This document shows positions 18,975 through 60,366 of a stretch of 64,000 bases of DNA, in pieces. The notes beneath the pieces are model-generated. The model had not been told where the DNA came from, made no database searches, and was given only the letters and a program-made list of their open reading frames with translations. How positions within the stretch are numbered: the first letter of the stretch is position 1; each line of letters starts with the position of its first letter. Source of the DNA: Calcarisporiella thermophila CBS 279.70 (lineage: Eukaryota; Fungi; Calcarisporiellomycota). The DNA lies in contig NW_027192229.1 of the NCBI RefSeq assembly GCF_041956535.1, positions 42,848-106,847 of the forward strand, in the 5' to 3' direction. A program made the translations under genes and the position numbers.

Positions 18975-21900
18975 TTATTTCTTTTGAGTCGAATTAGGAC
19001 CACCATAGGACGGGCTCATTGGACGATAAGATGGGCTGGTGGGACTGTAGGAGGGCGAAGTAGGGGAGTAGGAAGGATTTGCAGGAGAGTAGGATGGACT
19101 GGTTGGGGAGTATGAAGGGCTGGTGGGAGAATAAGATGGGCTTGTGGGCGAATAGGAAGGGCTAGTGGGGCTGTAAGAAGGACTTGTTGGTGAATAAGAC
19201 GGGCTCGTGGGTGAGTACGATGGGCTCGTCGGTGAATATGTAGGGCTCGTCGGCGAGTAGGATGGACTCGTGGGCGAGTATTTTGGTGATGTGGGTGAGT
19301 ATTTAGGAGAAGTTGGTGAGTAGGAAGGACTCGTTGGGGAATATGACGGGCTTGTGGGGGAATAGTTTGGAGATGTGGGAGAGTAATTGGGTGACGTGGG
19401 GGAGTAGGATGGGCTAGTGGGAGAGTATGAAGGGCTTGTGGGAGAGTAAGAGGGACTGGTTGGAGAGTACGATGGACTTGTTGGAGAGTACGACGGGCTC
19501 GTTGGAGAATAGGATGGACTAGTGGGCGAATATGAAGGGCTGGTGGGAGAATAGGAGGGGCTGGTTGGAGAGTAGCCTGGAGATGAGGGGCTGTAAGCAG
19601 GGCTTGCGGCATAACCTGGAGAAGAGGGGGAGTATCCGGGACTCGCGGGAGAATAGCCCGGGCTTGTCGCTCCATATGGGCTCATTCCGCCGCTCCATGG
19701 ACTGGCCGCCCCCACTCCATAACCACCTGTCTCTGCAATGGGTGAGAACATTGCATTCTCCGCCACACCAGGCCTATAGTATTCTGCAAAGTGACCAGGA
19801 GAGCGTGCCTCGTATGGCGTCTGCTGGGGAGTCATCGAGCCGCCCATAGGAGTGTAGCTGCCAGCTCCTACAGTGCCGAGCGTGGCCACATGGGTTGTTG
19901 GTACCACATTTTGAAGCATAACTTCGTCAAGCATCACATCAAAGCTGCCTGTGCCCAATGGAGCCAACTGCCCGAGCATGATGTTCTCAGATACTCCTCG
20001 GCAATCATCCAGCTCTCCTACTGCAGCAGCCTCCAACAAAATCTCAACTGTTTCTTCGAAGGAACATCGCATAAGGGCACCCGTCTCTGCACGGTTGATT
20101 CCGTGACGAGTAATGGCCATCAAGTGCCCATGCATCGTCATCACATCGCAGAGCAAGGCCAAGTGACGGTAATTGACGTAGGATGCATCAAATTCAATAA
20201 CAGCACGCAATTCCTTAAGAAGCGCAGCACGAGTAGCCTCGATGCCAAGCACATCCATAATTTCAAGACAATTGTTTGAGTAGGTTCGGCGATGGTCAAC
20301 ACCCTCTTGGCAAAGGACCTTCTGGAGGTTACTTCCCGTAGTTTCAAGAACCCACTCGTTGACCTTGTCAAAGGTGCCGTCCTCACGACGTACTACTTGG
20401 GACTTTTCAACCATAAATACTCTTTCAATACCCTCAATACCACGCAGTGATATAGAGCTCAACATGTTACTCTCGATACGACGCAAGAATACGTCTTCCT
20501 CTATTCTTCCAGATTCATCCATACCCTCGTCCTATTGTTTGAATGGAGTGCAATTGAAAATAAATAAATAGCGTTTATGTAAACGCAGTTTCAAGCAAAA
20601 AAATACCTTTTCCATGCCATCCTCGTGCATAATACGACATCTAATTACGAGATTCTCCATGTTATCATCACTGCAGATGACGTGCAAATCATTCTTGAAG
20701 TCATCGTTAATGCGGTTAGTTACATCAAGCATGCTCAAGTTTTTATCGATCATCATAGCTCTGTTGAGTATAATACGCAAGAGCCATGGCGAAACATTAT
20801 TTATTACGGCCGGGTTGTCGCTCTATAAAAATCAGCTAATTTCAGAAATCAATCGAGCGAGTAAGCGATGTATCACAAATTACCTCGAGCGCGTAGTAAG
20901 CTTCTGTAAACTCTTTATCCTCTTCGATGATAGTGTTCTCAATGTCAGGATCGTAATAAATCTCAGTTGCTTTAGTAATCTTTTGCAGGGTAGTGTGTTC
21001 GAGTGCGACCTGAACTTCCTTTGCGAGCTCCATATTACGAGCGCGGTCAGGAACAAGATACACAGTCAGGATGGGGGTCTTGATATTCTTTGCCACGTTG
21101 ATAATTTCCTTCAAACGAGGGACACCAAGCGTTACGTTTTTACTCGATACACCAGCATAATGGAAAGTATTAAGCGTCATTTGCGTGGCAGGTTCTCCAA
21201 TGGATTGTGCAGCAATGGTTCCAACCATCTCACCAGGATGCACCATGGCCAAATTGAATCTACTCTCAATCTCACCAAGGATCCATTCAAATGCAGCGGT
21301 GTTCAGGTGGAACTCCTCAATTACTCGCTTAGCAGCAAAAGTTGCGCGAAGCAGTGTCTGGAAGAGGAGGGTTGCGTTTTGCTGAGCACCCAGACTGATC
21401 GGGTCGCTACCGCGAACGACAACTAGGCGTTCCGCGAGATCTCGTACACTAGTAACAATCTGCTGTGGATGGATGTTACAAGGTTTCTTTGGATCAATGT
21501 GGAAAATGGTCTGCGCATTCCAAATCAATCGTTTTAGATTCACAGGCAACCAGCAGTCTGCGTCACCCTTAGGGAAAACGAAATCGCGTAGGAGATTTCG
21601 GTCCTCCTCCAATCGATCAAACTCGGCGTTGAGAAGTGCCTGAGTGTCTGCATCCCCATCAATTTCTGACAGAACTCCAATATCGAGAGTGCCGGGTTTG
21701 AAAGAACGCGAACGATCCATCACATCGACCCGGTATTTCTTCTCAAAGTTTTTATCAGAAAGCTTGAGAGAATCAATGGTCTGTTTCTCAACATGCCCAC
21801 CATCCATTCCATCCTCGCCGTAGCAGAATTGGATGACTTCACCAAGCGAATTGCGCACAGTTCCATCATAGCTGGCCATGACATCTTCCAGGGCTTTTAC

Positions 21901-29606: not shown

Positions 29607-30282
29607 ATGACTGTACCTATAAAGACCGCAAGCAGCAACATCAAAAAGAATGTTACCGTGCGTCCATTCTCGCCCTCCAATGATGAAAAACATTTTGAGC
29701 GCATTCGTGGCCTCATTAACAGTGCCTATCGTTCAGGTAGGTTGAATTTGAAGGCATTTCCAAACTTAAGAAATTAAACCATTGCCCTAAATGTGAATGG
29801 ATTGTCTAGATAAAAGTTGGACCACCGAAAAACATCTGATTCGGGGAGAGAGGATGACTATCGAAAATCTCAGACGCACTTTGGAAAATGACTCAATTCA
29901 TTTGTTCCTCGCATCGATTCCCGGGAATTCGGCGGAGAATAAACAAGCTTCCAGTGAAGATGAGCTGATCGTAGGAACCGTTGATATCGAGTTCAATGAA
30001 GAATATCCTGGTGCAGGACTTCTTGGCTGTCTTGCAGTGGACCCAGAATTTCAGTCCCATGGCATAGGTTCACGACTCGTCTCCCATGCCATGCACTTTG
30101 CTAAAGAGCAACTCAAGCTGAGCAAAATGGTGATATGGGTTGTGGACAAGCGTTCAGATATTATTGGGTGGTATGAAAGACTTGGCTTTAAGAAGACAAT
30201 GGAAAGACGCCCATTTGTATGGCCCAACCTAATCCGGGACGGAATTGAGCTCGATTTTATTGTGCTAGAAAAAGCTCTGTAA
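29607..30282 (+). CDS. GNAT-family N-acetyltransferase, 2 exons (tandem copy 1)
   Basis: LINSAYRS/DKSWTTE spans a GT-AG intron. Acetyl-CoA motif LAVDPEFQSHGIGSRL and WYERLGF. Confidence 0.92.
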
Positions 30283-30490
30283 ACCGAATGTTTGCTTGCA
30301 TAGTGTGCACATCTTAACAAAAGATCTTTACATGCTTTGACGAACCTTAGCTCTTCGCCAAAAGATTTATCCAATTAATTTGATTTTTATCGAGATTTAT
30401 TACCGTAAAAAATTAAAATCAACTCCGCTCAAGTCAGAAAGCATATATCTGACAACCTAGTCCTCCATTATTTTTTCTGAATTGACAACA

Positions 30491-31162
30491 ATGAGCATTA
30501 CTTCTGTTGAGAATCTAAAGAATCAGGTCAAGATATCCAGCGCCAAACTCGAACATGACGTGCATGTAGAGAGGCTGTATAAAATTATTAATGCCGCATA
30601 CCGCTCAGGCAAGTGTTTTTCTATATCTAACGGTTCGAGAAGCTATCTTATACTTACCCTGAATTAAATAGATAAGGGATGGACGCACGAAGCTCACCTT
30701 GTAAAAGAAGATCGCATCACTATCCCCGAACTTAAAGAGCTAATTGCTGATGTAGAACACAAGCACGGTCATCTTCTGCTAGCATTTCTTCCTGCAGACT
30801 CCACCCCCGTTCTAAACCCGACGGATGCAGAGCGTGCTCTCGGCGAAGTTGTCGTGGGCAGCATTCAGATAGAGCCATCGCCACGTGGTGAAGATGAATG
30901 TCTTATCGGATTGCTGGCAGTCGATCCAGCACTTCAATCTTTGGGGATAGGTAGCAGGCTTATGCGAAGTGCAATTGACTTTGCCCGTGATATTCTCAAG
31001 AAAAAGCACGCTGCTGTTTGGGTTTTGAACCAGCGGCCAGAGGTCCACAGTTGGTATTCGAGACTTGGCTTTGAGAAAACAGGAGAGCAGCTTGAGTTTG
31101 TAAACCCGCAGAATCTAAAAGATAAAGAAACGCATATGATCGTCATGCGTAGGACCTTTTAA
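30491..31162 (+). CDS. GNAT-family N-acetyltransferase, 2 exons (tandem copy 2; GC-AG intron)
   Basis: IINAAYRS/DKGWTHE spans intron 30609-30671. LAVDPALQSLGIGSRL and WYSRLGF. Confidence 0.92.
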
Positions 31163-31420: not shown

Positions 31421-34334
31421 CTATAACTTTAAATCTGCCAGTATCCGTGAGCATATCTTCCTATACTGCCACGCGTCGCCGCTGATCCTATGAAATTGCA
31501 CCCCGTGCATTCCAAGTAGCCACGGAACACGAACGATATGCACCTCAAAGCGAAGTATAAGTCCTGCGACCTGTTGGGAAGTCATAGTTGACTCCTCTTC
31601 AAAAGACTCTCGATACTCGCCCCCACCACCCCTGATTTTACCTCGCTCATTTTTTAACAAATCGAACTCCATCAGGCTTTGTTGTTGCTGCACCTGCTGT
31701 TGGGTGCTTGCAAGATCGATGCTTGGTAAGTGAAGACATTCATATCCTCCCTTAATCTCATGGTATTGTACCCCGATTTGATTTAGCACTTGTTCCACAT
31801 TGCTTCGAATTTGTAGAGCGGGCTTAGTGGATGTGGTTGCTACCGAAAACAGTCCCTTCAAGAACACAGGTTTTGCCTCCATCCGCTGCTTGTTCGAACT
31901 GGGCGTGGTAGGCGTCGTAGGAGAGAAAGGATAGCTGTTGTTTGTGTGCTGAGGAGAGGTAAATTGCTCCGAAGATTGCTGCTGAGGGATGGAGACTTTA
32001 GGGAGTTCAACGGCGGGTGCTTTGGTATTAGCCGAGCGGCCGCCGCCAGATGATGCTGCTGCACTGGCAATCCAGGACCCCCCGATTGACGATGGGCGTT
32101 GTCTATGCCGGCGGTATTCCGTTTCCGGCAAAGAAACCGCTCGAGTAACCCCCTTTGTATCGCCTACTTCCTCAGAGTCTCGGACACTATCACGCTCCGT
32201 TAGTTGCGGAGAAGGGGTGGCATAAGCAGAAAGCGCAGAAGGATGTCTTGAGTGTTGGCCTTTGAAGGTGGGGCGCCGCCCTCCATCTAGAGAAGTTCTA
32301 CCCAGAGCCATCCCCAACCTTTTGAAAACGCTCCCATCACTCTTGCTTGGACTGCTAGGTTCCTCTCTCGAAAATATCGAAGGCCGCTCATCTCGGCCCA
32401 GTGTACGTCGTCGTTCCTTGGTTGGCACCGTGGGGGGCGGATGGTAGAGATCGGGAACATCTATTTCCAACGAAGGACCGTTGGTAGCATGCAATGGATC
32501 GGGCAAGGGAATCTGTGGGGCAGCAAATCTTTGCTGTTGCGCCTGTTGCTGTCGTAGCTTTTGTTCCGCTTGTGCCTTCAAGGCCTGCCGTTCTCTTTCT
32601 TGCTTCTCGCGTACAAGATGGTATATCGATATCAAGGGGTGATATGCCTCAGGCAGAGTAATTGGATCGTCCGGGGGTGGAGGTGGTGGCGTCTTTCCTC
32701 CCCCCATTTGTTTATTAAATAGGGTCTTAACAGTTGAATTGTTTCGCATGGATGAGGGAGCAACGGATTCTACGCTTCTCCAATACGCCTGGTTCTGTGC
32801 AAGCTGCTTAGCAGCACGCTGATACGTGTCACTTGTCACGATTGCCTCCAACTCGCGCCGAATTTCTTGCTCAGTGCCAAACTCAAATCCAGTCATTCCA
32901 CGAATAACATCCATGTCAAGAGGGAGACTAAGTGGTAGGCGGTATGGTAAATAGTTTTTGATTTTGGTGTCAAATCCCCGATTTAGCCAGGGATGCTCCA
33001 TGATCTCGGTTAGTGTAGCGCGTTGTGAGGGATCTGTTACAAGCATGCGAGAAATGAGATGCTTGCATTCTATAGATAGAGGGAGAAAATTAATTAATCA
33101 TGAGAAATCTCTTATGAAGGAAAGAGAACTAGTACCAGAACTAAGATAATTGGGATATTCCACAATCCCCCGTTTAATTTTCGCGTGCAGTGCAGGCATG
33201 CTTTGATCATCAAACGGCACCTTTCCACATACCAATACATATAAAACAATTCCAAGACTCCAGATATCTACTTCTGGTCCAGTATACATCTTTGCATTTA
33301 GGAGTTCAGGTGCTGCAAAGTAAAGCGAGCCGCAGAATGTGGAGAGCAGTTTGTCTGGCGAGTAGAGGTTCGAGAGCCCAAAATCGATGATTTTAACGTC
33401 CCCCATCTTGGAAATTAGGATGTTTTCAATTTTTAAGTCTAAAGATAGAAAAAAAAAATTGAATAAAAAACCCTCTACCCAATAGTTGTGCTAAACAAAA
33501 TGTACATACCCCGGTGTACTATCGAGTTTCGATGGCAATAATCTATTAAAATAAAAAGAAAAAAACCGCAAATAAGCGCATGAACACACATATAATAACA
33601 CTTAGTGTATTGCTGATTCATACCAAGTGCGCTTACAATTTGTCGTATAAATTTTCGAGCCTGCTTTTCCTTAATCTTCCCATGGCTGATTATATAATCG
33701 AGGAGCTGTGCTCCGTCTACAAATTCAAATACCATATAATAGTAGTTTGGGAGCACCATCATCTCGCGCAATCCTACAATATATGGGTGGTGTAGCAGTA
33801 GCATGATGGAGCCTTCGCGAATAGTACGTATTTCTCGATTTTCATTCTTTTCTGGCCTAGATTTTCGTCCGCCGCTGTTGTTATGTGTACGCGGAATGAT
33901 CTTGATGGCAAACTAGAGAGAGAAACATTGATGGTCGATAAGTTAATCGAGCCAAGTATAAAATCTTGAAATCAGTACTGAGGCGTTGAATATTTTGCCA
34001 CACAAATCTATACCTTTTCACCAGTAGTATTGTGGACACCTAATTTCACTTTTCCCATACTTCCTGCACCTAGAGTTTTGGTGAGCGTATATGCGCCAAG
34101 TATTTTCTTGGTTCTCGATTGTTGCTGCTTTATTCTCCGCGCATCGTCTATATCGGTAGTGAAATTTTCATTGGCGAAATCGGATGTTGACGATTGCGCG
34201 GTTTGAGTGGAAGGAATATTAGCACTCTGAGAACACTCTACTTCATTTGCGGATTGCGGCGCGATCTTATCAAGGATCTCGGAAGAAGAGGGAGGAATTG
34301 GAGGAAGCACTTTTTCTGCAAGAACGGCAGACAT
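31421..34334 (-). CDS. KIN1: Kin1/Par-1/MARK Ser/Thr kinase with C-terminal KA1 domain, multi-exon
   Basis: [45 protein letters not shown]1 segments [17 protein letters not shown] and [19 protein letters not shown]. Confidence 0.96.
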
Positions 34335-35357: not shown

Positions 35358-38300
35358 ATGAAAAAAGATGCCAGGTACGAGTCGCCCGAGGAATCTTGCA
35401 CCCTTGTTCCAAAAAAACGACCATGGCTCGATTTAGTGCTTAATCCATGCGAGTCGACTTTATCCAAATCTACAACAACTAAATTAGAGAGCAATGATAA
35501 ATCCCAGGGAGCGAAATCTCGTGAAGGGATGTCTATGGATGAGCAAATAAGCACTGTTGTGGAAATTTTGGCAGGGATATTGCGACTGACCAAAGAAGAT
35601 GTTGAATACCGACTCCCTCAACTAGAAATGAGTATGCATCTATTTAATCTAGTGTGCCGCCGCATTTAATTTTAACTACTATTTTTACAGATGATGTGCG
35701 CAATAATCCCTCTCCTATTCTTGCTGAAATCAATTCACTGCTCGATGGCTCAGATGCAAAATTAATTTCCTCCCTACATCATCTACGCCAATGTCTGGCT
35801 GAGACTACCTCCCCCTCTTATAGCGCATATGCCCGAGCCATCAATTTCTATGCGCTAATGACCGCTTTTATCACAGTATGTCAATGCTTTTTTGAGGTCT
35901 TGGTCTGGGAGCTGTCAGCAAGCTCAGAGAACGATACCGCATTTATCATGGGTGATCGAAATCATGTATTAAGGAAATTCTTGACCGCATTTCATAACGA
36001 AGACAACTTCCTTGCAGAGACCGGTAGGCAAGGTGGCATGGATGCATTTTTGTGGCACTATCACCTTGTCACCTGCCCCAACAGCCCACGTCAAAAACTG
36101 TCGGGCGGTTCAAATATGACGGATCGTCTAATTGCAGATTTGCAAGCAAAATCTATTCGTTTTGTGTCCCTAGATGCTATAGAATCCATTTACTCGACGT
36201 TTTACACCCAATATTTCCTAAATGCCGTCGCGACCCAACATCAAAAGGATCATGGCCAATTCTACACTCCACGCGGTGTGATCAGGTTTATGTGGGATCG
36301 ATGTCTGCATGATCGAGACGAGTCGACCTTACTGCAAAGAATCCTTGATGTTAAGGATTCTAATGATGGCAATAAGATGGAAGTAGACGGGTTTATCCCG
36401 CGGGTGCTAGATCCCTGTATGGGCACTGGAGGATTTCTTGCCGAATACATCAACCGTCTAACCACCGCTGCATCGCACCACCCCAAAATATGGAACTCTC
36501 CAACACATATTCAGACACTTATACGCGCTATCTGTGCGAATCTTTGGGGCATTGAAATAGACTCTTTTGCACTCCACTTCTGTCGCATAAATATAATGGC
36601 TCACCTTTTGCCGCTGTATTGGCGTAGTATACGACTCTCGGGATCTTGGCCCGATATTTATCAGTTGCCGCGTTTAAAATTGTTTTGTAACGACACAATG
36701 CGGTTGCATGTGGGGGAAGACGATGACAGGTGGGAAGCTCATGAGATGCATACCCTTAGGGAGATAATTCAATTCGACTTCGTGGTAACAAACCCGCCCT
36801 ACATGATCCGGAAAACAGGGTATTTAGCAGCACCGGACAACAAGCTCTATGATGAGCGTGTATTAGGAGCACGGGGTACTCAAGCATATCTGTACTTTTT
36901 ATGGTTTGCACTGCAACGATTAGTGCCTGAGACGGGTGTCGTGTGTCTTATCACAGGTAAACTTATTACACCGCGAAATAACATAGGTTGGAATGGTTCA
37001 ATAACTCGCTTTGTTCTATTTAGCGAGCCAATGGTTGGGGCTGGAGTTTGCCGATAAGCTGAGGTATTTGGATGAAGATGCTCGGCTTTATATCGGCAAT
37101 TTCTCACATCTTGAACCTTTTTTAGGCTATGGCTTTGGAACAACTGTTACCTTGAAGAATTCTATCAGTTCGAACCCTATCGAGTTTGGCGTAAAGTCCA
37201 AACCGATTCATTAATATTCAGAATACGCCGACGAGCAACCCCCCTCAATGTCCCAAGCTCTCCCATCCCCTATCCTGCTGCTCCGACGAACGGCAAAGAA
37301 AACGGAACACATGAATCACCTCGCGACATAATATTTCTTCGCCATGTCAATAAGCGCTCTACACTTGAAGAGACGCTTGACGCTTACGCTCGATTTGACC
37401 CACGGTGCCCATCCGCATCCAATGTAGACTTTCGAATCACGCCTGCTACAAACTTTGCCCCCCCCACCTCCAATGCTTCTTTCACATTCTTAATGCCCAC
37501 AACCGCAGTAAGCGAGGAGCTTGCAACACTTGTGAGCCATCTGCCAGGTTTGTGTGACCCCAATGGTAAAGTAAGTGGGTGGAGTGACGAGCGCCCGTTA
37601 GAATGGCATCGCGGACCTAATACCAACCCCGTTTATGCGCTTGTTGTGAGAACAGCATGGGCTAAAGAAACCTTTGGAGAAGAATGCTGTAAACGGTGGA
37701 TGAGACGTGTATTTTACTGGAATGGAAAAAACTCCGGAGTTGGAGAGGAGCCCTCCTCTCCTGCCGGGGGAAGTGGAAATGGAAATGGAACTAAAGCGGT
37801 AGTAATAAGCAATCCAGCCGTGGGAAGCGGGAAAAAAGAGGCCAAATTCTGGTATTGTAGAGATTCGCTCCGCCTCACAAAAAAAGAATCCTCTCCTGCT
37901 GAGAGCTATTTGCCTTTTATTGATCCGGTCCGTGGAGATTACTCACTTATTCTGGTGGATAAGGAGGGAGCGACTAGATTGAAGCAAGAGGTGGGAGAAG
38001 AGGGGCCGCTCTGGAAATATTTGCGTGAAGCCAGAGAGCAGCTACAGAGTGGCATGCGAGATAAGGAAGTGGCGTGGTGCCAATTCAACAATTGCGGGTA
38101 AATCCAAAAACGAATAAGAGAAATAGAGCATTGAAATCATCTTTTTTTGGATACTATATAGAAGCGATATACCTGTAAAAATCGTCCATCCCATCAACTA
38201 CGGGTATTTTTCGAAATCACAGGTAGAAAATCAGAAGAACACATTCGCGTGACGGATGCTAATCATTGCTCTGTGTGTCTAGCCAAGACAACGCTTTTTC

Positions 38301-39113
38301 CTTGATGTAGATAGCGTTTGTGTCACAAATCAGTGTATCTATTTCACCGTCAAGCCTGGGCATCCGCCTGCCTCCTTCTTTCTAGCGCTACTCAACTCAA
38401 CCTCGGTGCAATATTTTCTTACCGTGCACTGTCGGTATGATCAACAAGGACGTCTGCGATTATTTCGAGAATCAATGGCGCGTGTTCCATACGCGAAACC
38501 AAGAGGACAATTATGCATTGAAAGCATGGTCGATTTGGCAATTGGAGCCCGAGAAGTTAGGCACCTGCTGTTTTGGATAGCAACCGGCGGAAGCGGAGAT
38601 AGCGAGGGTGTCGGAAAAGGATTTCCAGTGGCAGAGAAGATAAGAAGGGGAATTTGGGAAATTTCAAAGAGTGAAAAAACCTGTCTCCTGGATTGGTGGT
38701 CCAAGAGGATCGAGTCAGCCAGGAGAGAAAAGGAGCCGAATGGTAACAGCAAGAATTCGGGGGCTAGAGGGTCTGGGAATGAGTCAGTTATACATCACGT
38801 CGAAACCTTGCTCTGGATCGGCGCCATCCTCCAGTATGCGGTTGACCAACACGCATATGCTCTCTATCATATTAACCCTGGGATACAAGTTGCCCTTGAA
38901 CAAGAACTTGGTTTGGAAGTATCAGAAAAAATCATTGAGCAGTATCCGCGATTCACTCCGCCCTCCCATACACAAGGCGAGACAAATGTAATCGAAGAGA
39001 CCAGAGTTCCCTCCTGGGGAGCAGAATTGATAAAAGAGATGCATAATGTATTGAAAGAGGCCACTCGCTTTTTTGCACGCTGTGGGTTTGAAGCCAACCT
39101 TCGCCACTCTTAG
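35358..39113 (+). CDS. Restriction-modification-type (gamma-class, M.TaqI/Eco57I-like) N6-adenine DNA methyltransferase with C-terminal TRD, 6 exons, ~1147 aa (start uncertain)
   Basis: Exons 35358-35631, 35691-36956, 37024-37063, 37126-38097, 38162-38222 and 38283-39113 are all GT-AG bounded and total 3444 nt in frame. Motifs in order: GQFYTP (X), VLDPCMGTGGFL (I), WGIEID (II), FDFVVTNPPY (IV), YLYFL (V), GVVCLIT (VI). TaqI_C-like segment FLALLNS..VQYF...GRLRLF..SMARVP. Confidence 0.88.
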
Positions 39114-39674: not shown

Positions 39675-42346
39675 ATGAGTTCCACGGCTCATCGCATCCC
39701 AGCTCCTAAAAATGTACGTCCCCAAACAAATCGTACTGCATCGACTCGTAGCACGACTGATCCAGCCGTGAAGGTAGCTTCGCCTGGTTCCGACAAATAT
39801 ACTTCCGCTAGGCAGCCAAAGACCATTGTTGCAGGATCACGAATTCCAACACCATCTATGCCCAGCAAACCACAGGTAGCATCCACCCAAACTCCATCGA
39901 AGACTGCAAGTCGTCTCACTCCCCCCGTGCCCTCACCGGACATGAGGGAACATAAACCTCCCCCCAGGATTCCACATCCCGCCACCACCTCAAAACCAGT
40001 TTCCAGCTCGACATCAGGCGGCATGAATCGCCTAACCCCTACAGCTTCTGTCACCCCTCGTACACCCGCGCCGAAAACACCCACCCGCACCCCCACCCGC
40101 ACCCCCACACGATCACCTCGCACCCCGCTCACATCTTCCTCTACTCCAAAGGCAAAGGCCTCCCCATCAGTAAGAGAGGCAATCGCGCAGGCGCGATTAC
40201 GAATGTCCAAAAAAGCAATGGAAAATAACAGCACTGACGACGACGACGCCAAGATGAGCTTAGAAATGGAAATAAAGAGAGCCAAGGCTACCGGTAGGAA
40301 ACCAGTTTCGTTGCTACATATTATCTAATATTAACTCTATTGTCTACCTATATTTCATATGTCTCCATGAAGGCCGCATCAACCTTTCAAATCGCGGATT
40401 GACGGAAGTTCCAAAAGAGGTGTGGAACATGTACCGCGTTGACCCCAAATCCATAGTGATAGATCTGAGCAGAAGCGCCGCAGATGACCCATACGAGTCT
40501 CCCATTGCGGTCGACCTCACATCTCTTGTCCTTGGAGATAATAATCTAACCTGTATTGACTCGCGTATTGCCGAATTCGCTGCATTGACCAATGTCGACC
40601 TTCGAAACAATGAGCTCACCGAACTCCCACATGACTTTGGGGGGCTCCGTAGATTGAAAATTCTAAATTTGTCAGGGAATAGATTGATGGCCGTCCCGCA
40701 AGTCATCTTTCAACTTGCAGAGCTGGTGGAATTAAATTTGGCAAAAAACCAGCTGAGCGGTAGGCTGGCGCCCGAGATAGGTAGACTTGCGAATCTGAGA
40801 ATGCTGGATGTATCGGATAACATGCTTGATATGTTACCTGCAAAGGAGCTTGAGTGTTTGGTGGAATTGAGAATACTGAACATCTCAAAAAATCGACTGC
40901 CTTTTCTACCTGCGCATGCGCTGTTGAAGATGGTGAGACTGGAAGAATTGGAGGCAGGCGAAAATGCTCTTACAACGGCCTTCGCCGGTCTGAGAGATAT
41001 CCTTAGTGGTGGTGAGGACGGGGAAAGCACAAACAGCTCCGACGCACGGTACCATTCGGCTTTTGTGATGCCTGCGTTGACCCGCCTCAATTTGCGCAAA
41101 AATGCTCTAGTTTGCTTCGATGACCATCCCACCGAACACATCCGAATGCCCAGCCTTCGTGAGCTATTTCTCACACACAACCACCTCGCTGACTTGGGCA
41201 AGCTTTTCCTCCACGCACCACTACTTCAAGTTTTGGATATAGGTTACAATAAGTTCACAGAGGTACCCGCCCATCTCACTCAATGCACAAAGCTGCAGCG
41301 CCTAGACTTAAGCTACAACACAATATCTGAACTACCAACAGAATTTGGCCGCTTGGAGGGGTTAAAAGTGCTAGCAGTTGACGGAAATATTATTCGTGGT
41401 GCCCCCCGTACCGGGAAAACTGAGGACATATTGAAGTGGCTGCAGAAACGTCTGACACTCTCTCAACCGCACTCCGAGGTACACAATGAGCGAGAAGACG
41501 CGCCGCCAAGAACAGACAAAGCTTCCGTGCAGACCAAGGATCGGGCTACTCCCACTTCGGATTCAGCGCCAACAAGGACCGACGCAGAATCATCCTCGGA
41601 AATCTGGAGTACTCAGCCCCATACCGCTCTACAGACTAGAATTCTCCATCTCGAGAAAAGGGGGCTTACCGACTTGACCCCCCAAGATTTGGCCGGCCCC
41701 ACGTTTTCACCTCACACAATCGAGCTTAGCCATAACAAACTAGCATCCATTCCGCATGCACTAGCTGGAGACGCGTTTGCTAACTTAAAATCACTGAGCC
41801 TCCATCACAACCGGCTGGAAACGTTCAAAGTTTTAATGGTTGGTGTGCAATTTACACATTTAGAGGCTCTTGACCTTTCGCACAACCTAGTTAGTATATA
41901 ACCTGTGTTGACAATGTGGACGTTCACTAAAGCTCCTTACTTCTTGTTTTTCTGCTAAGATCACAGATATCTTTACCCCGTCGGAGGAAGATCGGGGTGA
42001 CAAGTCAAGTTTCCCCGCCCTTCACCAACTCGTTCTCGCCTTCAACCGCCTAACCAGCCTTCCCCCCTCCCTCACGCATTATTTTCCTCGCCTGCACTCC
42101 CTGGTAGTTTCAAACAATCTCATTGAACGAATCGAACCCTCCTCCTTTACAGGCCTGCAGCTTTTAGATTTGTCAAACAACAGCATTGGGCATCTCCCGC
42201 CCGAACTGGGGCTTGTGACTAGCATCAAAACTATGATGGTGGAGGGGAACATGTTTAGGGTCCCGAGGCGGCAGGTGTGGGAAAGAGGCACCGATACTTT
42301 GATGGAATGGCTGAGGAATCAAATGCCGCTTGAAGATGGAGCCTAG
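39675..42346 (+). CDS. Leucine-rich repeat protein (LRRC40-like) with Pro/Thr-rich N-terminus, 3 exons
   Basis: Many LxxLxLxxNxL repeats in two blocks, each closed by GN...P...T..(I/L)(L/M)xWL. Introns at about 40294-40371 and 41890-41959. Confidence 0.85.
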
Positions 42347-51539: not shown

Positions 51540-52559
51540 GAGGTCGAGGCGAGGGGTGGCAGGGAGTGGGGGGGGGGGGGAGGGCCGGGGCCAAAAAAGA
51601 AGCGCTTACTTAACAGTGTGATTCTCTACTCATCTGTGTGTTATTTTTGTTTTCCCTTGTGTTATATAATATACAATCCATCTTCCCTTGATTTTTCCCT
51701 TCGCGCTCCTATCCGTCAATCCTATAGACGGTTTCGACGCCAGCACTCCTTTTTAATTTTTCCCTTCCGCAAATTGCTTACCAAGAGAGATTTTCCGGGA
51801 TTTAGAAAAACGCAACCTTCACACACCCGACCTGAAAACAAAAGCAGTGACGAAACGATGATTTCATTGCAAATAAAAAGAGAATAGCGATTCTTTTTTT
51901 TTATCCGACGGTTCTTTTTATGCAAATATGGCTTGTGCTCCAAGCCAACGGAAAATTCCCCTTCCCTGTGGTTCAGTTGAGTAATCACAGGAGCCCGCTT
52001 TCGACCGATCTTCCTTTTTTTCCCTTCGGAGCCGTCGGCAATCAGAATTGGGAATTCTTCCCGTTTGAGCCAGGTCCAATCGCGGTACGGCTGCGCCAGA
52101 CTGTGCCTCTCACGGTGATTGGGCCATGCGGAGTGTTTCCATCTAAAAATTGAAAGGCTCAAATTTGGCGCCTCCTTTTTTCATATTTAGTGTCGCTAAA
52201 TTTTCTATTCCCCTTTTCTAAATATTTCGTTTGAGTTTCAGTCCGACTAAATATAACGAGGCCGTAATTGACCGTTAAAGTTCCTTAGGCCGCTTTTTTT
52301 CCTCTTCATTCCATTGCTTCTGCAATTTCTCGCCTCGTCGCTTTTGCGCTTGAGAACGCCGTGCTCAGAGCCCTCTCCTCCCCTTACTCTACTTTCTTCC
52401 TCCACGGGTGATCCCCCCCCCAATCACAGAGACTTCTTCAAGCTGGCGTCCTTCACCACCTACGCCGTGGACACGCGCTCCGAAAAGTCGGAGCCGCTGC
52501 ACCTCCCCCTAACGACCGCGGACCCTGCGGCCGTCTCCGCCGACAGCAAGGCGTCCTTC

Positions 52560-53838
52560 ATGCAGCCGCTGCTCTCCTATTACCACCGCCCGCAAAAGCT
52601 GGCGAAGGCTGGGGCATGGCCTGCGGCCATCGATACTTCCTATATATGGCTTGGTCTCTATTTCTGTTTCAACCTGGCCCTGACAATCTACAACAAGGCT
52701 GTGATGCAGCTCTTCGACTTCGGCTTCCCATGGACGCTAACGGGAATCCATACTCTGTGCGGGGCAGTCGGCGCCTACCTGTGCTGCCAGATGGGCTACT
52801 TTCGGCCGGCCAACTTGGGAGAGCGGGAGAGCTTAGTCATGCTGCTCTTTTCGGTGCTGTACACTATCAATATTGCTATTAGTAATGTGTCCCTGAACCT
52901 GGTCACCGTGCCCGTGAGTATTTCCTCTGCCCTCTGACGTGGCGACACGAGATGCAGGACACTGACTCCCGTGTTTACATTATTGTTAGTTCCATCAAGT
53001 GGTTCGTGCCATGACGCCCCTCTTCACCATCATTCTCTCGGTGTTTTTCTTGCAAAAACACTACTCCATCATGGTGTATATCTCTCTGATACCGGTACGT
53101 GATCATGCATTCTATCCACGCTCCCATTCTATCATATTCATTGACGTTTGTGTTGTCCTCTTCTAGGTGGTGCTCGGAGTTGCCTTTGCCACCTTTGGCG
53201 ACTACAACTACACACCCATGGGCTTTGTTCTCACCGTGCTCGGCGGTGTTCTCGCGGCACTGAAGACCGTGGTGACCAATCGCGTTCAGGTCGGCCGGCT
53301 CAAACTACACCCGCTCGATCTGCTTCTTCGCATGTCGCCTCTGGCCTTTCTGCAGACGATGATCTATGCCTACGTGACGGGCGAGATGGCGGAGCTGCGC
53401 GAGTTCTCCCGCGCGGGCGGAATGAGCACGACGCTGGTGCTTGCGCTGCTTGCCAATGGGGTGATCGCGTTTTTCCTCAACATCGTGTCCTTCACCGCCA
53501 ACAAGCGGACGAGCGCGCTCACCATGACGGTGGCCGGAAACGTCAAGCAAGTGCTGACGATCGTCATCGCCGTGGTCATCTTCCACATCAACATCACGTT
53601 TATGAACGCAATCGGCATCCTGCTCACCCTTGTGGGGGGCGCCTGGTACACGAAGATCGAGCTGGCCGAGAAGCAGGGCAAGCCGGTGACTCCCAGCTCG
53701 CTTGCCTCGCTCCCCTTCTTCAAGTCCATCGCCCGCCTCTTCGATCACCGGGCGAAAGTCCTCACGCCCGGCGACTCGCTCCTGGGCTCGACCGTAGACA
53801 TGAAGCTCCCTGTCCACGGGACAAAACCCCCCCTCTAA
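52560..53838 (+). CDS. Triose-phosphate/nucleotide-sugar transporter (TPT/SLC35 family), 3 or more exons; start uncertain (ORF open from 52314)
   Basis: YFCFNLALTIYNK, FPWTLTGIH, NIAISNVSL.LVTVP/FHQVVRA, LHPLDLLLRMSPLA and ALTMTVAGNVKQ. Confidence 0.9.
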
Positions 53839-54598
53839 TTTATTAACCCCCTCCATAGTGAATATAATGTGATATATGGTATATGTTTGCCGTTTATATT
53901 ATTTTATTATTGTTATTTTTTTTTTCTCCTCTCTCCATTTCTATTATTATTCTTAGTTTATGTCATGGCACTTATTCGTTCTTCTCTTTTTCCTTACATA
54001 GAGCGTGTATATTTTTTTTTTTTGGCCATTTAATTTTATATGGTTTGAGCTGAATTTTTTATCTTTATGGCTTTTACTTTTTTTTTACTTTTTCCTTCCT
54101 CCCAACTCTCCTTTTGTATATTCCTCCTCTCTCTCTTTATCTCTTTCATATGCCTTTTTTTTTTCTCCTTTGAGCATAAACTACCCATTTCAAATACATA
54201 CTTCTTCTCACTCCAACTTCTGCAGAAAGTGCTCTTATTGTGATGGCGTACAAGGATTTCTTTTTTTTATTGCGCTGTTGATTTTTCCAATCTATCATGA
54301 ATAGGACTAGGTAACGGAGCAAGCTAGTTTGTGTTTATTAGGGTCGGATAGGCACAGACTGGATAGGGGAGAAGGGTAGGAGGGAGCTGGGGCCAAGAGG
54401 TGGGGGATATAGCATATTAATTTATTCAAAAGCAAAGAAGGAATAAGACAAAAGACCCCCTCGCCCGTCGTATTATTACCGATGCCCCATCCCATGGAAA
54501 GAAGTGAAAATTACAAATGCAAGCATGACTACAGATCTTTCTATCCGCCTCCCCCCTCCCCTCCCGTCCTTCTCGCACTTCTCATCTCCAACCGTCGC

Positions 54599-55877
54599 CT
54601 ACTCCAGCCGCTTGGTCAGGATCTCGCACCCGGTCTCGGTGACGAGAAGGGTCTGCTCGAACTGGGCCGAGCGCTTCCCGTCTTCCGTCACCGCCGTCCA
54701 CTGGTCCGGCCATGTCACGTCCCGATGGGTGCCCTGGGAGATCATCGGCTCAATCGTAAATACGTGGCCCGGCCGCATGACCCCGACCGCCTTGTTCTTC
54801 GCATAGTGCGGGACGTTGGGCGCACAGTGGAACAGCTTGTGGATCCCGTGGCCGCAATACGTGCGCACCACCGAGAACCCTCGGCTCTTAGCATGCTTCT
54901 CGATGACGGGCCCCACGTCGCGGTAGAGAGTGCCCGGCTTGACGATCGCAATCGCCTTCTCAAGGCACTCCCGCGTCGTGTCGACGAGCTTTTGCGACTC
55001 CGCATCCACCTCGCCGACACAATAGGTCTCGTTGAGATCCCCGTGGAAGCCCCGATAGTAGAGCGAGACATCGATGTTGATGATGTCTCCATTTTGCAGG
55101 GGGCGTTGGTCCGGAATTCCATGGCAAATCACCTCATTCACCGAACTGTTACGGCGGCACATTGAGGGCAAAACAAAAAGGGAGAGAAGAAAAGAAATTA
55201 GAAGAGTCCGCGAGTTCAGCGGAATGCTACCAATGTAGGGGAATGGGATTCCAAACGGGCCACTTACGTGCAGCAACTCTTTGGGAAATGCCAGTAATTC
55301 AGCGGCGACGGGTATGCTCCGCGTTTGATGGTGGCCTCGTGGATGATCCGGTCGATCTCGTCGGTTGTCACGCCAGCCTTGACGGCCTTTGCTCCCTCCT
55401 CCAGCACCTCCCGAGCCAGCCTACAGACCACCCGCATCCCCTCCTGCTCCTCTGCATTGAGCACCTTGATCGAGGAATAGAAGGGAGCCCGGTTGTAGCG
55501 CGGATCGCCGTCCTCGGAATAGTTCGGCCGGGGAATGGTCAGCGGAACCTCGCGTTTGGGAGAGAGCGGGTAGGCGGGGCGCAGAGAGCCGGTGAATTTG
55601 TACGAGGGCCAGGGATTGTAGGGCTTGTTGGCGGCGGGAGAGACGGGGCCCTCTTTCGCGAGATGGAGGACCTTGTGGAGCGACTATCGTGGAAGCGAGA
55701 TTAGTACCGGTTGGCCCCCTCTCTTGCAAAACCAAACCCAGATCGGCTTACCCAGTTTTTCTTGAAGCACTCCTGAGAACAAAAGTAGGCGGGTGGCAAT
55801 TCAAGTTTGATGCACGTCGGGCACTGGAGCTTGGCGGGGTTGTTGCACCCTTCCCCCTGACATGTGTGCTGATCCAT
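54599..55877 (-). CDS. MAP1: Methionine aminopeptidase 1 with N-terminal zinc finger, multi-exon
   Basis: LQCPTCIKL...[54 protein letters not shown] and SAQFEQT. Confidence 0.97.
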
Positions 55878-56356
55878 TCTGTTGATTGGCGCGAGGCAAA
55901 AAGGAAGGGGGTACTGCTAGATAGAAATCGAGGAGAGTAGAGTGGGTGTGTGAGTGTGCCCCCCCTGATAGAGAAGAGTTAGATAGGATGCTTAGCTGAG
56001 TTGTTTACGCACGAATGTAGAACCAGTCACTTTATGAAATAGATAAGCATTGTACAGCTGAGGCACAAAATTACAAACTGAAAAAAAAAGTGTTCAAGAC
56101 AAATAGATAATGCGAGGGCCGGGGAGAAAGGCAAAAATGGAGAGGAGAGAAAGCAAGCGAACCATGGAGTATATAGCTACAAAAGAGGGAGGGGGGGGGG
56201 GAGGGTTAACGTGAAATAAACTTACAGGAAGTAAAATTACTAATGAAACAGTGGGTGGATGATGGTGATTATGAATACATGAAAAAGAAAAGAAATAAGA
56301 GAAGAAAACAAAAGAAAACACATGCAAAAAGGCGATGTGAAGACAACTGCGACCCT

Positions 56357-59135
56357 CTACTCGTTAATACACTGCGCAAGTATCTGGTCATACCATGGGG
56401 CGTACACTCGTCTATTGAACAGGGCCAATTCACGCACGCTCTCGCCTATTCTTTCCAAATCCGCGCGCACCATCTCCAAACCTAGACTCGAGAGTCGCTC
56501 CAGTGGCATCGGCTGGCCGCTCGCGAGGTGGTGGGCCATCGTCGACTGAGCGCGACGCAGTAGCAGCTGCACCACCGTATCACCCGACTTGAAGAGCGTT
56601 TTCTCGACCATGGCGCGAAGGAGGCTCTGGCGTTCGGGAGAAACCTGGACCCCTGCCCATCGAAGAATGCATTCGGTGATCGCCTCCGCGCCGTGGGATT
56701 TGTCTCCGCTCTCAGCGCCACCCTCTGCGCCATGGTCACCCCCGCCCCTGCCCGTTGGTATATTCTCTCGCAAAATGCGATAGATCTCGTCGCGTAGGGA
56801 TGGGTCATTCCGCCCAAAAAAGTTCCGCACAAGCATCAACAGCGCGGCCACCTTGGTCACCATTCGAACCTCGGCACGCAGCTCTACGATTCTATCTACA
56901 TCTAGCCGCATGGTCTCAGGCAGCGATGCTTCCGATGACGCCCCTTCGCTCTCCATCGTACACATCATCGCCACCATCGCGGTGTTGTACACTTGCTCGT
57001 ATCTTAGAGGCGGCTGGGGCACTCCCTCCGGATTTCTCTTCGCCATCTCCTCCTTCAGCCCGTGCGCGCTCTCCCTCAGCCAAGCCTCCGTGCGCTCCAA
57101 AGAAAGCGTGCCCTCTTTCAGCGCCTTTTCGAACCCCGCGCGCTCATACTCCACGATGTGCTGGACAATGTACGGCCTCGCCATTCTAATGTGGAAGTTG
57201 GCCAGGTCAAGCTGCATGGTGTCGAGCATATCGAATATCTGTTTGAAGGCCTCGGCAGGGTCCTCGAGGCGCACGATCGCCTGGATGGCTTCATCGCGTG
57301 AGGGCGCACAGAGCCGGTGCATGATCCCCAGGATAAACCGGATGCAGCCCTGCAAGTCGAAGACGCCCTTGGCGGCCTGCTGCCGCATCAAATCCACGTC
57401 CAAGATCTCCTCGATCTCGCGGCTGGTGGCGGAAGCGGGAACCATTTCTAGCAGGCGCTGTTTGATTTCGCCCACTACTGGCACCCAGCGCTCGGCTCTC
57501 CCCTGTGCGAAGTCTTCCTTCGCCACGTCGAAGAACGCCTGCGTGGCGACATCACGAACGTAAACCTCAAGGGCGGACCGCGGCGGGGGGGAGAGTTCGA
57601 AATTCGGGTCGAGCGCGATGCGATGGGCAAGCTGCTCGTTGGTGAGGGAAAATCCCGTGGATTGGATCGGGATCTCGCTGAGAACAGAGGAGGCGCCCTT
57701 TGAGGTCGAGGGGGTTGCGGCGTCCTCCACCGAACGAGGTGCAGCTTGCGGCGAGGAGGCAGGGGGCGTTGATCCTTTGTCGGGCCTGTTTCCATAGTCG
57801 CCTCTCTCGTGGTTCGGGCCGGCCTCTATCTGGATGGAGTCTTCTTCAACTTCAGGCGAGCTGGGCCTCTCCTCAAGCACTTCCCTCCTCGCCCCCTCCA
57901 GCCTCTCCAAGGCCTGCCTCCCCCCCAGCCCCGCCAAATGCCGTCGGATATCTCTCTGCTGCTCCTCGATCTTCGGCTTCCACTCCGTCACGAAATCCGG
58001 CGAATTGGCCACCGTATTCCAGAGTCGATCCAACTCGACGTGGTGGGCCATGAGTCCGCGAATGAGCCGCTCGGCATCCTTTGCCTTCCACGCTTCGAAC
58101 GAGCGGTAGTACGTATGCCAAGCCTCGTTAAAAGAGCGCAGGCGCTGCGCCTTTAAGCTTGGGGCCGTCTCGTCCCGCCATATTTCAAACTTAACCAGCA
58201 TCGTCTTCGTTATGCCGACGAGCAACCGCTCGTCTACTCCGGTAGCACCCAGTACTTCGTGTGGGTGGGTTACGATCATGAACGCCGTCAGGAAGACCTT
58301 CGCCGGGTTGCCGCTGTATCTTTTGGACGTCAAGGGCATCATTTGCCGGATCGCCTGCAGCAGCTTTGAAGTGGCGCGGATGAGCTCCTTACTGTTCAGA
58401 AGGCGCTGGAGCCGCGCAAAGCTGCTTTTCTCTGCGCTTTTAAGCGTGAGCCCGTAGGAGATGAACTCGCTAAGCAGGGTGTTTAGGCGTCTATTGGGGA
58501 AGGCTTCGTCCGCGGCTAAAAGGAGATCAGGGTTCGAATCGTGGTTTTGGTGAATACTCTGTAGGATGCGAGACTTGGGAAGCGAGAGCAGTCGTTCACG
58601 TCGTAGCTCTGACTGGCGCAGACGCCGTTCCAAATCTTCTCGCTGCTTCTCTGAATGACAAAAAAAAAACCAAATCCAATGAGCGGAAAATTAAAGGAGC
58701 GAACATAGCAAGCGTGGTAGTGCTACGTGATGGAGCAAAGGAAGACGGGATCGATAGCAGAGCACACATACCTCTCTCCTCCATTTGCTTTGCCTTTTGC
58801 ATCCGCGCAACGCGCTTTGCTCTTTCCACGGCATCCCCACACACCTTCGACTGCTGTTGGAGGATCCTTTCTCTCCTCATTTGAGCTTCCTTAAACCGGG
58901 CCAACATCCGTTGCTTCCTCACTCCGGTATCACAGGGAGACGAGTGACCCCGTTGCGCGCGGTGGTGAGATAAGCGGCGAATAAGGCGAGAGCGCCGTGC
59001 CTCAAGGATGGCGTCGCGACGGCCGGAGGCGTGCTCCGCCGATTCACGGGCCGGTGGAGAGGGGAGCGACGACGACGACGACGACGACAAAAGGTCCTTG
59101 TGAGAACGACTTGAGGACGGCTGGTCTTCTTCCAT
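56357..59135 (-). CDS. SOK1: Tcp11/Sok1 family protein, 2 exons
   Basis: LTNEQLAHRIALDPNF, LDVDLMRQQ..GVFD, LCAPSRD, MQLDLANF, VEYER..F and LPETMRLD..R. Intron at about 58652-58770. Confidence 0.9.
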
Positions 59136-60366
59136 AATTGTGTGGGTGACCCTTCGGTGGATTTCAGAAAGGGAGAGGAGGGAAAGAGGGTGTGAAACCG
59201 AAGAGATAATAAAGGAGCAAGGGCAAAAGGAAGTCAAAAGAAAACGACTGATAGAAATGGATTGGTCAGCAGAATTTGCGGTCACATTCGCATCATTCAT
59301 CTCCCTTGCATAATATAAGCGGATATGCATTAGTCCATAAAAGAAAACGGCTCTTCACGCAACGGATGAAGCCATGGGAAGCGAGCTGGAAAGTCCCTAG
59401 TCCCTATGGCTGCTTATCGCGCGTGCTCGCACCTATATTCCCCTCCCAAGGCGCCCATGAGGATCGCGCGGAGGTTATAGAAAATTCCGGCAACAAGTTC
59501 CTTAATAACAACAGCCAAAAAAAGGTCCGACTCTGGCCAAATTATTAATTATAGGAGAGGCCGGGATCGGGTGGACAACCTTTGTCTCCTCTCCAGCAAG
59601 AGCTTGACCAGACTGAGATTGGCCGTTCATATCCATGGTGTGGCGTCATTTCTGCACACACGATGGAATAGGAACTGCGCCTCATCCATGCTTTGGGATT
59701 CTTGGTCGACTCAGATCCGGGATCCAGGGTATTAAGCAGAGTTTCGATCAAGAATGTTTAGGATGGGCTTCGAGAAAGAGGCGGAATACGGTTGGGTGGG
59801 CTCATATGAGTCAGTTCACTAGAGCAGGTAGAGAGGAATTCTAAAATACGGAAGCTTCCCATCTTGTTACGGACAGTAGCTCTTTCTCTGACCTATGTTT
59901 GGAGTAGAGCCGCTCTTGTTTTTCATTTGATGCGTGATCAACAGTATACGAAAATCGGGATGGAGGGATGCGACGGCCGTAAATCGCCTGCTGTCTTCTT
60001 GTTTGTATTTACACAAGTTCCTACCGCGCCCTCTCTCTACGCTCCATTCTGGCTGCGGCAGAGCGGGTAAACATATGTAAAATTCGTACGCTGCGCTGAG
60101 TTGGAAATAAAAAATAGAGCAGCCACGCAGTCCACTGTAGATTCTCGTACGCTCCCCCAGCATTTGCCTCCAAAACTCTCTTTCTCTCCCGGTCATTGTT
60201 CGATTTGATTTGCGGATCTCATCGACTCCTTACACTCCTTCCCTCCGGCTCCTCTCTTGATCACCCCCTCTTGATCACCACCTTGTTCCATTCCTTTCGA
60301 AGCTCTTGAATTGGCAGGCTCCAATTAAGTCAGTATACCATTTTATTTTATTTATTCCCCTTGAAG

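What the first reader, a model, noticed from the sequence alone, without database searches (positions are those of the whole stretch)
35358..39113. Domesticated restriction-modification-type N6-adenine DNA methyltransferase in a fungal housekeeping block
Seen: five spliceosomal introns splice to an intact ~1147-aa ORF. It has gamma-class amino-MTase motifs in order (GQFYTP; VLDPCMGTGGFL; GIEID; NPPY; YLYFL; GVVCLITASQWL...ADKLR; YQFEPYRVW..VQTDSLIF), an HsdM-like helical region (DAFLWH...DAIESIYS) and a TaqI_C-like target-recognition domain. It has a PKKRP NLS-like motif near the N-terminus. No PD-(D/E)xK nuclease motif, partner REase or transposon ends are evident, and it sits between KIN1 and an LRRC40-like gene. 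Knowledge: this architecture is that of bacterial type II/IIG MTases (M.TaqI, Eco57I), whereas the symmetric ApT 6mA of early-diverging fungi is written by MT-A70-family enzymes. Inference: an old bacterial acquisition, now intronised and nuclear, that could write a second sequence-specific 6mA (or 4mC) mark. This is a candidate undescribed fungal epigenetic or genome-defence system, although annotated homologs may already exist in related genomes.
Basis: partly seen in the sequence, partly recalled or inferred. Interest (0 to 1): 0.85.

Follow-up and report, generated by a model that had tools for sequence, protein, structure and literature searches.

The report
Fungal MetB asymmetric DNA adenine methyltransferase
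This is the Calcarisporiella thermophila copy of MetB, a DNA adenine methyltransferase that early fungi took from bacteria long ago; its role as the writer of one-strand (asymmetric) 6mA marks was already shown in Mucor in 2024, so it is a new family member and not a new system.

Summary
Six exons and five GT-AG introns give an intact 1147-aa gamma-class amino-methyltransferase. The model is identical to the public gene VTP21DRAFT_8234 of Calcarisporiella thermophila. The gene is single-copy and lies between a KIN1-type kinase and an LRR gene.

The 'undescribed' claim fails. It is the orthologue of MetB (Lax et al. 2024, PMC11258239), whose deletion in Mucor lusitanicus removes 70-75% of 6mA and the asymmetric AAA6mACA motif. 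Its top hits are accessions on that paper's MetB list, and it falls inside the fungal MetB clade (SH-aLRT 99). It keeps 177 of 184 family-conserved residues, NPPY included. A Mucor orthologue folds like CamA/MmeI without a nuclease domain.

Small additions: this is a record from Calcarisporiellomycota, which the paper did not sample. Introns 2-5 sit at the same positions in Basidiobolus and Rhizophagus, so intron gain is ancient. Two putative DNA-reading loops are invariant in the 13 family sequences aligned, which suggests a similar target motif. Activity, motif and expression in this species were not tested; no RNA runs were listed. The scan's earlier notes concern other 6mA genes of this genome, not this one.

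The parts
35358..35631 (+). Exon 1 (aa 1-91): variable N-terminal extension with a PKKRP basic, NLS-like motif (35409-35423)
   Evidence: no Pfam or homologue hit; similar short basic motifs in 5 of 6 homologue N-termini checked
35632..35690 (+). Intron 1, 59 nt, phase 1
   Evidence: a phase-1 intron in the N-terminal region of all five homologues mapped, exact position not alignable
35691..36956 (+). Exon 2 (aa 93-513): helical domain, then the methyltransferase core with motif X (GQFYTP), motif I (DPCMGTGGF), GIEID and catalytic motif IV NPPY (36791-36802)
   Evidence: the Mucor orthologue's helical domain aligns with HsdM, MmeI and DrdV
36957..37023 (+). Intron 2, 67 nt, phase 1 (CLIT|A-SQW); same position in Basidiobolus, Rhizophagus and, read by eye, Paraphysoderma
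37024..37063 (+). Exon 3 (aa 515-526)
37064..37125 (+). Intron 3, 62 nt, phase 2 (ADKL|R); same position in Mucor, Jimgerdemannia, Basidiobolus and Rhizophagus
37126..38097 (+). Exon 4 (aa 528-850): end of the methyltransferase domain (YQFEPY..VQTDSLIF) and first part of the target-recognition domain (WHRGPNTNP)
   Evidence: single copy in the genome
38098..38161 (+). Intron 4, 64 nt, phase 2 (NNC|G); same position in Jimgerdemannia, Basidiobolus and Rhizophagus
38162..38222 (+). Exon 5 (aa 852-871), KIVHPINYGYF, strongly conserved part of the recognition domain
   Evidence: 67-84% identity to fungal MetB proteins over 15-20 aa
38223..38282 (+). Intron 5, 60 nt, phase 0 (SKSQ|PRQR); same position in Jimgerdemannia, Basidiobolus and Rhizophagus
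38283..39113 (+). Exon 6 (aa 872-1147): TaqI_C-like recognition subdomain with the invariant loops VTNQC (38322-38336) and YDQQ-R-R-F (38436-38465), then C-terminal helices and the stop
31421..34334 (-). Upstream neighbour (context only): KIN1/MARK-type kinase with KA1 domain, divergently transcribed
39675..41901 (+). Downstream neighbour (context only): leucine-rich-repeat protein; end coordinate is that of the last ORF examined

Best explanation
The gene is the single-copy Calcarisporiella thermophila orthologue of MetB. It encodes a nuclear, SAM-dependent, gamma-class DNA N6-adenine methyltransferase descended from a bacterial single-chain restriction-modification enzyme (IIG/IIL-like) that has no nuclease domain. 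Mechanism, by inference from structure and family knowledge: the C-terminal recognition domain binds a short non-palindromic A-rich sequence, the target adenine is flipped into the NPPY pocket and methylated at N6, on one strand only, so the mark is asymmetric and must be rewritten after replication. The target is probably like Mucor's AAA6mACA. It works beside the MT-A70 machinery for symmetric ApT marks. Shown here: gene structure, orthology, intact motifs, family fold, ancient introns. Shown in Mucor by others: the 6mA-writing function and motif. Inferred for this species: activity, motif, nuclear location.
For: Exon-2 hits are accessions on the paper's MetB list: KAI9143530, KXN73575, OAD69548, RUS17405, CAG8493446, KAI8988547 and others. 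A reverse search with the listed Mycotypha MetB finds this gene at E 4e-178, 38% identity, 87% cover. The tree places exon 2 in a 31-row all-fungal clade, SH-aLRT 99 on a stem of length 1.02, containing both sequences the paper names as clade 1. Exons 2, 4, 5 and 6 are collinear with all fungal homologues tested. 177 of 184 family-conserved positions are kept. Only one copy in the genome; the second PF02384 hit is a HemK/PrmC-type protein. Introns 2-5 are at shared positions. The AlphaFold model of a Mucor orthologue (pLDDT 84.7) matches CamA at Z 28.2 over 550 of 568 residues, and MmeI, DrdV and BrxX at Z 20-22. The Mucor knockout loses 70-75% of 6mA and the AAA6mACA motif (PMC11258239).
Against: No methylome, enzyme assay or RNA data for this species (it is absent from the paper's tables). 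I did not hold the M. lusitanicus MetB sequence under its own accession; Mucor velutinosus, M. circinelloides and M. bainieri orthologues stood in (the paper counts one copy in M. lusitanicus). Identity to Mucor is only 29-45% per large exon, so the motif may have drifted; one otherwise invariant proline is arginine here. The tree is the quick search without bootstrap, on the methyltransferase region only. The paper shows knockout genetics in the passages read, not purified-enzyme activity.
Confidence: 0.93

Rival explanations
1. It is a MetB orthologue with a different target motif: the recognition domain has drifted, as bacterial IIG/IIL enzymes often do, and this species carries a new asymmetric 6mA motif.
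For: Only 29-45% identity to Mucor in exons 4 and 6; residues next to the invariant loop differ (RLRLFRES here against RMRFFGRL in Mucor). In the MmeI family two residue changes switch a base (PMC2731914).
Against: All 33 conserved positions in exon 6, all 7 in exon 5 and 63 of 67 in exon 4 are kept. VTNQC and YDQQ-R-R-F are invariant in 13 sequences from Paraphysoderma and Conidiobolus to Mucor and align, weakly (E 0.73), with CamA's DNA-contacting Ser472/Ala473 and Ile517/Tyr521. The RLFRE variant is shared with Rhizophagus, Basidiobolus and Podila, so it is the common non-Mucorales state.
Confidence: 0.25
2. It is a genome-defence or self/non-self marking enzyme, paired with an unrecognised nuclease or reader.
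For: Restriction-modification ancestry and fold. In Mucor 6mA is slightly enriched on repeats (0.23 in the paper's Fig. 2b source data).
Against: No nuclease domain: the Mucor model is structured from residue 27 and starts with the helical domain. No PD-(D/E)xK-like pattern in six N-terminal extensions. No partner or conserved neighbour in six homologous loci. Mucor methylation ratios near 0.5 are too incomplete for self-protection. Reported phenotypes are hydroxyurea sensitivity, lipid content and virulence in larvae.
Confidence: 0.07
3. It is a protein or RNA methyltransferase (HemK/N6AMT1 or Trm11 type), or a bacterial contaminant.
For: Shares NPPY with HemK; trivial PrmC and UPF0020 partial hits.
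Against: Those hits cover 20-30 residues and are below cut-off; the real HemK-type gene is elsewhere in the genome. The family fold includes a full DNA-recognition domain. Five spliceosomal introns, four at ancestral positions, and fungal neighbours exclude contamination.
Confidence: 0.01

Closest known systems
MetB of Mucor lusitanicus (JGI ID 1597305; fungal PF02384 'clade 1', Lax et al. 2024, PMC11258239)
   Same: Same family and orthologous group: single copy, same domain order, collinear over exons 2-6, NPPY, shared intron 3 with Mucor, same clade as the named members KAI9143530 and KXN73575.
   Different: Different species and phylum (Calcarisporiellomycota, not sampled by the paper). 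Longer (1147 aa against about 975), with a longer N-terminal extension and glycine-rich insertions. Keeps five introns where the Mucor orthologue mapped has two. Activity and motif not measured here.
CamA of Clostridioides difficile (orphan gamma-class 6mA methyltransferase, CAAAAA; PDB 7LT5, 7LNI)
   Same: Best structural match to the family model (Z 28.2, 550 residues aligned, rmsd 4.0); orphan enzyme with no nuclease; non-palindromic A-rich target.
   Different: About 16% identity; CamA lacks the N-terminal helical domain; bacterial. A shared fold does not imply a shared motif.
Type IIL/IIG single-chain enzymes MmeI, DrdV and BREX PglX/BrxX
   Same: Helical domain, methyltransferase, recognition domain in the same order (Z 20-22 over about 640-670 residues); MmeI-type enzymes modify one strand only.
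   Different: MmeI and DrdV carry an N-terminal nuclease that MetB lacks (alignments start at chain residue 143-156); 10-13% identity; no operon partners.
Iyer, Zhang and Aravind 2016 Group-2 (M.EcoKI/M.TaqI-like) clades 5 and 6 (PMC4738411)
   Same: [quoted passage not shown]
   Different: I did not check their sequence lists, so the assignment to clade 5 or 6 is a lead and not a test.
MTA1c / AMT1 (MT-A70 family) symmetric ApT writer
   Same: Also writes DNA 6mA in early-diverging fungi; four MT-A70 loci exist in this genome, three with DPPW.
   Different: Unrelated, circularly permuted family; multi-subunit; symmetric and heritable mark linked to active genes.

Membership tests
Fungal MetB (clade 1) | PF02384 N6_Mtase domain above cut-off | tested here: met
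   50.5 bits against cut-off 20.4, E 2.4e-13 on exon 2
Fungal MetB (clade 1) | Nests in the monophyletic fungal clade with KAI9143530 and KXN73575, apart from bacterial relatives | tested here: met
   31-row fungal clade, SH-aLRT 99, quick IQ-TREE search without bootstrap
Fungal MetB (clade 1) | C-terminal target-recognition domain homologous to that of MetB | tested here: met
   Exon 4 E 6e-74 and exon 6 E 2e-32 to the Mucor velutinosus orthologue; family model covers the CamA and MmeI recognition domains
Fungal MetB (clade 1) | Low identity to bacterial relatives, not a recent endosymbiont transfer (clade 2) or contaminant | tested here: met
   Non-fungal hits start at E 3e-20, mostly 24-40% identity over part of exon 2 only, with no BLAST hit for exons 4-6 in the six tested; ancestral introns
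Fungal MetB (clade 1) | Usually single copy, vertically inherited | tested here: met
   One locus in the 28.2-Mb genome; four intron positions shared across phyla
Fungal MetB (clade 1) | Intact catalytic and SAM-binding motifs | tested here: met
   NPPY, DPCMGTGGF, GIEID and GQFYTP present; 177 of 184 conserved positions kept
Fungal MetB (clade 1) | Deposits asymmetric 6mA at AAA6mACA in vivo | not testable with these tools
   No methylome or reads for this species; AAAACA count in the window is unremarkable, 64 against 53 +/- 7, which is uninformative
Type IIG/IIL restriction-modification enzyme | N-terminal PD-(D/E)xK endonuclease domain or a linked restriction gene | tested here: not met
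   No such domain in the family model, in Pfam scans or among neighbours
HemK/N6AMT1 or Trm11 protein/RNA methyltransferases | Full-length match to the family model, no DNA-recognition domain | tested here: not met
   PrmC 14 bits against cut-off 199; UPF0020 19.4 against 22.3, 20-30 residues only
MT-A70 / MTA1c | PF05063 domain, circularly permuted fold, DPPW | tested here: not met
   PF05063 matches lie on four other contigs, none at this locus

The most novel reading that the evidence does not exclude
Two readings are not excluded. (a) The Calcarisporiella enzyme reads a different motif from Mucor MetB and so writes an unreported asymmetric 6mA pattern. (b) The family is older or wider than a single transfer into fungi: its nearest outgroup in my tree (SH-aLRT 97) includes proteins from the protists Pigoraptor chileana and Gefionella okellyi, so a related methyltransferase lineage may be scattered across microbial eukaryotes. 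These rows are long-branched, 26-27% identical over the catalytic domain only, and mixed with prokaryote-looking contigs, so separate transfers or long-branch attraction are more likely.
Probability: 0.15. Interest if true: 0.4.

Novelty: new member of a known kind. Interest (0 to 1): 0.15.

Why it matters
Little on its own. The family, its bacterial origin and its function were published in 2024 and reviewed in 2026 (PMC11258239, PMC13297926). The gene fills an expected gap in the distribution (Calcarisporiellomycota). The shared intron positions are independent support for one ancient acquisition followed by vertical descent, which the passages I read argued from trees alone. What asymmetric 6mA does for the fungus is still open. 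An orthologue from a heat-tolerant species could be a convenient enzyme for biochemistry and a structure; no close relative has a solved structure.

Tried and rejected
Other acceptors for intron 5 (38310, 38314) break the frame; a 3-nt alternative for intron 4 (38164) is in frame, but the public model uses 38161. phmmer of exon 2 alone against the PDB found nothing at E 0.01; the family profile and the fold search did. No RNA run was listed. Synteny: tblastx of the window's flanks against six homologous loci gave no hit. Repeat search found only chance-level pairs, so no transposon ends. The AAAACA count is not informative. The careful bootstrap tree did not finish in two runs; the quick tree is reported. 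A Pfam scan of the 50-sequence alignment was over the size limit and was repeated on seven proteins. The likeness of D-QQG-R-x-R to the MmeI E806-x-R808-x-R810 code (C after, purine before the target) would fit AAA6mACA, but I obtained no residue-level alignment to MmeI, so it is speculation.

Full report
Observation. The gene model is correct. Exons at 35358-35631, 35691-36956, 37024-37063, 37126-38097, 38162-38222 and 38283-39113 sum to 3444 nt, i.e. 1147 codons plus stop. Each exon is open in the phase handed on by the one before, and the introns (59, 67, 62, 64, 60 nt) are all GT..AG. A search with exon 2 returned a public 1147-aa protein, P0036, 100% identical over the exon. All six exon translations are exact, ordered substrings of it. 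An independent search with a Mycotypha homologue named it 'uncharacterized protein VTP21DRAFT_8234 [Calcarisporiella thermophila]', a fungus of the phylum Calcarisporiellomycota. Exon 2 scores above cut-off for N6_Mtase (E 2.4e-13) and Eco57I (E 2.5e-10). The neighbours are a KIN1/MARK-type kinase with KA1 domain and an LRR gene. No RNA run was listed, so splicing was not seen in reads.

Method note. The joined protein was never sent to a search, fold or look-up tool; P0036 appeared only as a hit and was used only for the substring check. The structure prediction was made on a Mucor orthologue (P0196). No contig looked human.

What it is. Lax et al. 2024 (PMC11258239) describe MetB, a PF02384 protein of early-diverging fungi. 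Deleting it in Mucor lusitanicus removes 70-75% of 6mA, mainly the asymmetric sites, and abolishes the AAA6mACA motif; the mutant is hydroxyurea-sensitive, richer in lipid and less virulent in larvae. They report a fungal 'clade 1' from an ancient horizontal transfer, name Conidiobolus KXN73575.1 and Paraphysoderma KAI9143530.1 as members, and note an MmeI-like recognition domain. The hits of exon 2 are these proteins or share 90% clusters with them: KAI9143530.1, KXN73575.1, Phycomyces OAD69548.1, Endogone RUS17405.1, Cetraspora CAG8493446.1, Mycotypha KAI8988547.1 and more, all on the paper's accession list. The reverse search from Mycotypha MetB finds our gene at E 4e-178 over 87% of the query. 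Exons 2, 4, 5 and 6 are collinear with Mucorales, Umbelopsis, Endogonales, Glomeromycota, Mortierellales, Basidiobolus, Conidiobolus and Paraphysoderma homologues; exon 1 has no match. Placed on a 50-sequence family alignment, exons 2-6 tile the Mucor protein without overlap and keep 177 of 184 positions conserved in at least 90% of the family. In a tree of the methyltransferase region with 105 other sequences, exon 2 falls in a clade of 30 fungal proteins with SH-aLRT 99 on a long stem (quick search, the careful one did not finish). The genome holds one copy; the other PF02384 match is a HemK/PrmC-type gene. Calcarisporiella is not in the paper's tables, so this is an unsampled but expected member.

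Age. I mapped introns in homologous genes. Introns 2, 3, 4 and 5 lie at the same codon and phase in Basidiobolus ranarum and Rhizophagus irregularis; 3, 4 and 5 in Jimgerdemannia; 3 in Mucor velutinosus. All five have a phase-1 intron in the N-terminal region, as this gene does. Paraphysoderma has an intron at the position of intron 2, followed, as I read it by eye, by a 4-nt micro-exon. So the gene carried these introns before the Mucoromycota, Glomeromycota and Basidiobolus lines split, and probably before the split from Blastocladiomycota. Gene neighbours are not conserved.

Anatomy and mechanism. The AlphaFold model of the Mucor orthologue (mean pLDDT 84.7, pTM 0.81) matches the orphan 6mA methyltransferase CamA best (Z 28.2, 550 of 568 residues, rmsd 4.0), then HsdM subunits, DrdV, LlaGI, BrxX, MmeI, M.BseCI and M.TaqI (by sequence profile). 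Its order is helical domain, methyltransferase, recognition domain. It is structured from residue 27, and alignments to MmeI and DrdV begin after their nuclease regions, so the nuclease is absent. N-terminal extensions vary in length, show no PD-(D/E)xK-like pattern in the six checked, and five of them carry a short basic motif like PKKRP. In exon 6, VTNQC and YDQQ-R-R-F are invariant across 13 sequences. A weak profile alignment (E 0.73) puts them on CamA Ser472/Ala473 and Ile517/Tyr521, which contact DNA in the CamA structure (PMC8187626). I infer that these are base-reading loops and that the target motif is similar across the family. The chemistry (base flipping into the NPPY pocket, methyl transfer from SAM) is established knowledge for this class (PMC4738411). 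One-strand methylation of a non-palindromic site follows from the Mucor data. The genome also has four MT-A70 loci, three with DPPW, so the two-writer arrangement seen in Mucor probably exists here; I did not classify those loci.

Rivals. A changed motif is possible (0.25, compatible with membership). A defence role has no support beyond ancestry. A protein/RNA methyltransferase or contamination is excluded.

Beyond fungi. The nearest outgroup (SH-aLRT 97) includes Pigoraptor chileana and Gefionella okellyi proteins and several unnamed ones. Their contigs are mixed: one beside adenylosuccinate synthetase, one beside an McrBC pair, one near a protein kinase. Similarity is confined to the catalytic domain and branches are long, so I record this as a lead only. 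Iyer et al. 2016 already listed M.EcoKI/M.TaqI-like clades in rhizarians and basal fungi.

Verdict. New member of a known kind; interest 0.15.

Noticed in passing
P0069 (Pigoraptor chileana, 1680 aa), P0073 (Gefionella okellyi, 1142 aa), P0066 (L011:926-3664): Eco57I/N6_Mtase proteins from two protists and an unnamed assembly group next to the fungal MetB clade (SH-aLRT 97); similarity is limited to the catalytic domain and branches are long.
   Followed up: partly
L014:161-8020: A 1491-aa relative with a weak N-terminal OTU-like hit lies beside an ankyrin plus AAA_5 (McrB-like) gene and an McrBC gene on a metagenome contig: a possible defence island of unknown host.
   Followed up: no
P0048, P0051, P0053, P0055, P0056 (Gongronella butleri): MetB is expanded to at least five diverged paralogues, four on a contig of the same length (933 kb) with consecutive accessions: a natural place to look for changed motifs. 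The accessions are in the Lax list.
   Followed up: no
L021:8508-8625: Paraphysoderma metB appears to use a 4-nt micro-exon between two short introns at the position of the window's intron 2 (read by eye).
   Followed up: partly
Mortierellales homologues, e.g. P0227, P0229, P0239: These MetB proteins are much longer (about 1300-1850 aa), with large insertions that split the methyltransferase domain.
   Followed up: no
L004-L007 (G000 contigs C21, C10, C8, C2): Four MT-A70 loci in this genome: three with DPPW and one with DPPLEE, as expected of an inactive partner subunit.
   Followed up: partly
window 29797-31162: Two tandem GNAT acetyltransferase genes just beyond KIN1.
   Followed up: no
L002:1312-2223: HemK/PrmC-like methyltransferase in a single 303-aa ORF; the only other PF02384 match in the genome.
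   Followed up: partly
window 52000-63000 and 19001-20000: GC-richer stretch (0.49-0.62 against about 0.41 in the left half of the window) with strong AT skew, and a 1-kb block with GC skew 0.38; both overlap long ORFs and probably reflect low-complexity coding sequence.
   Followed up: no
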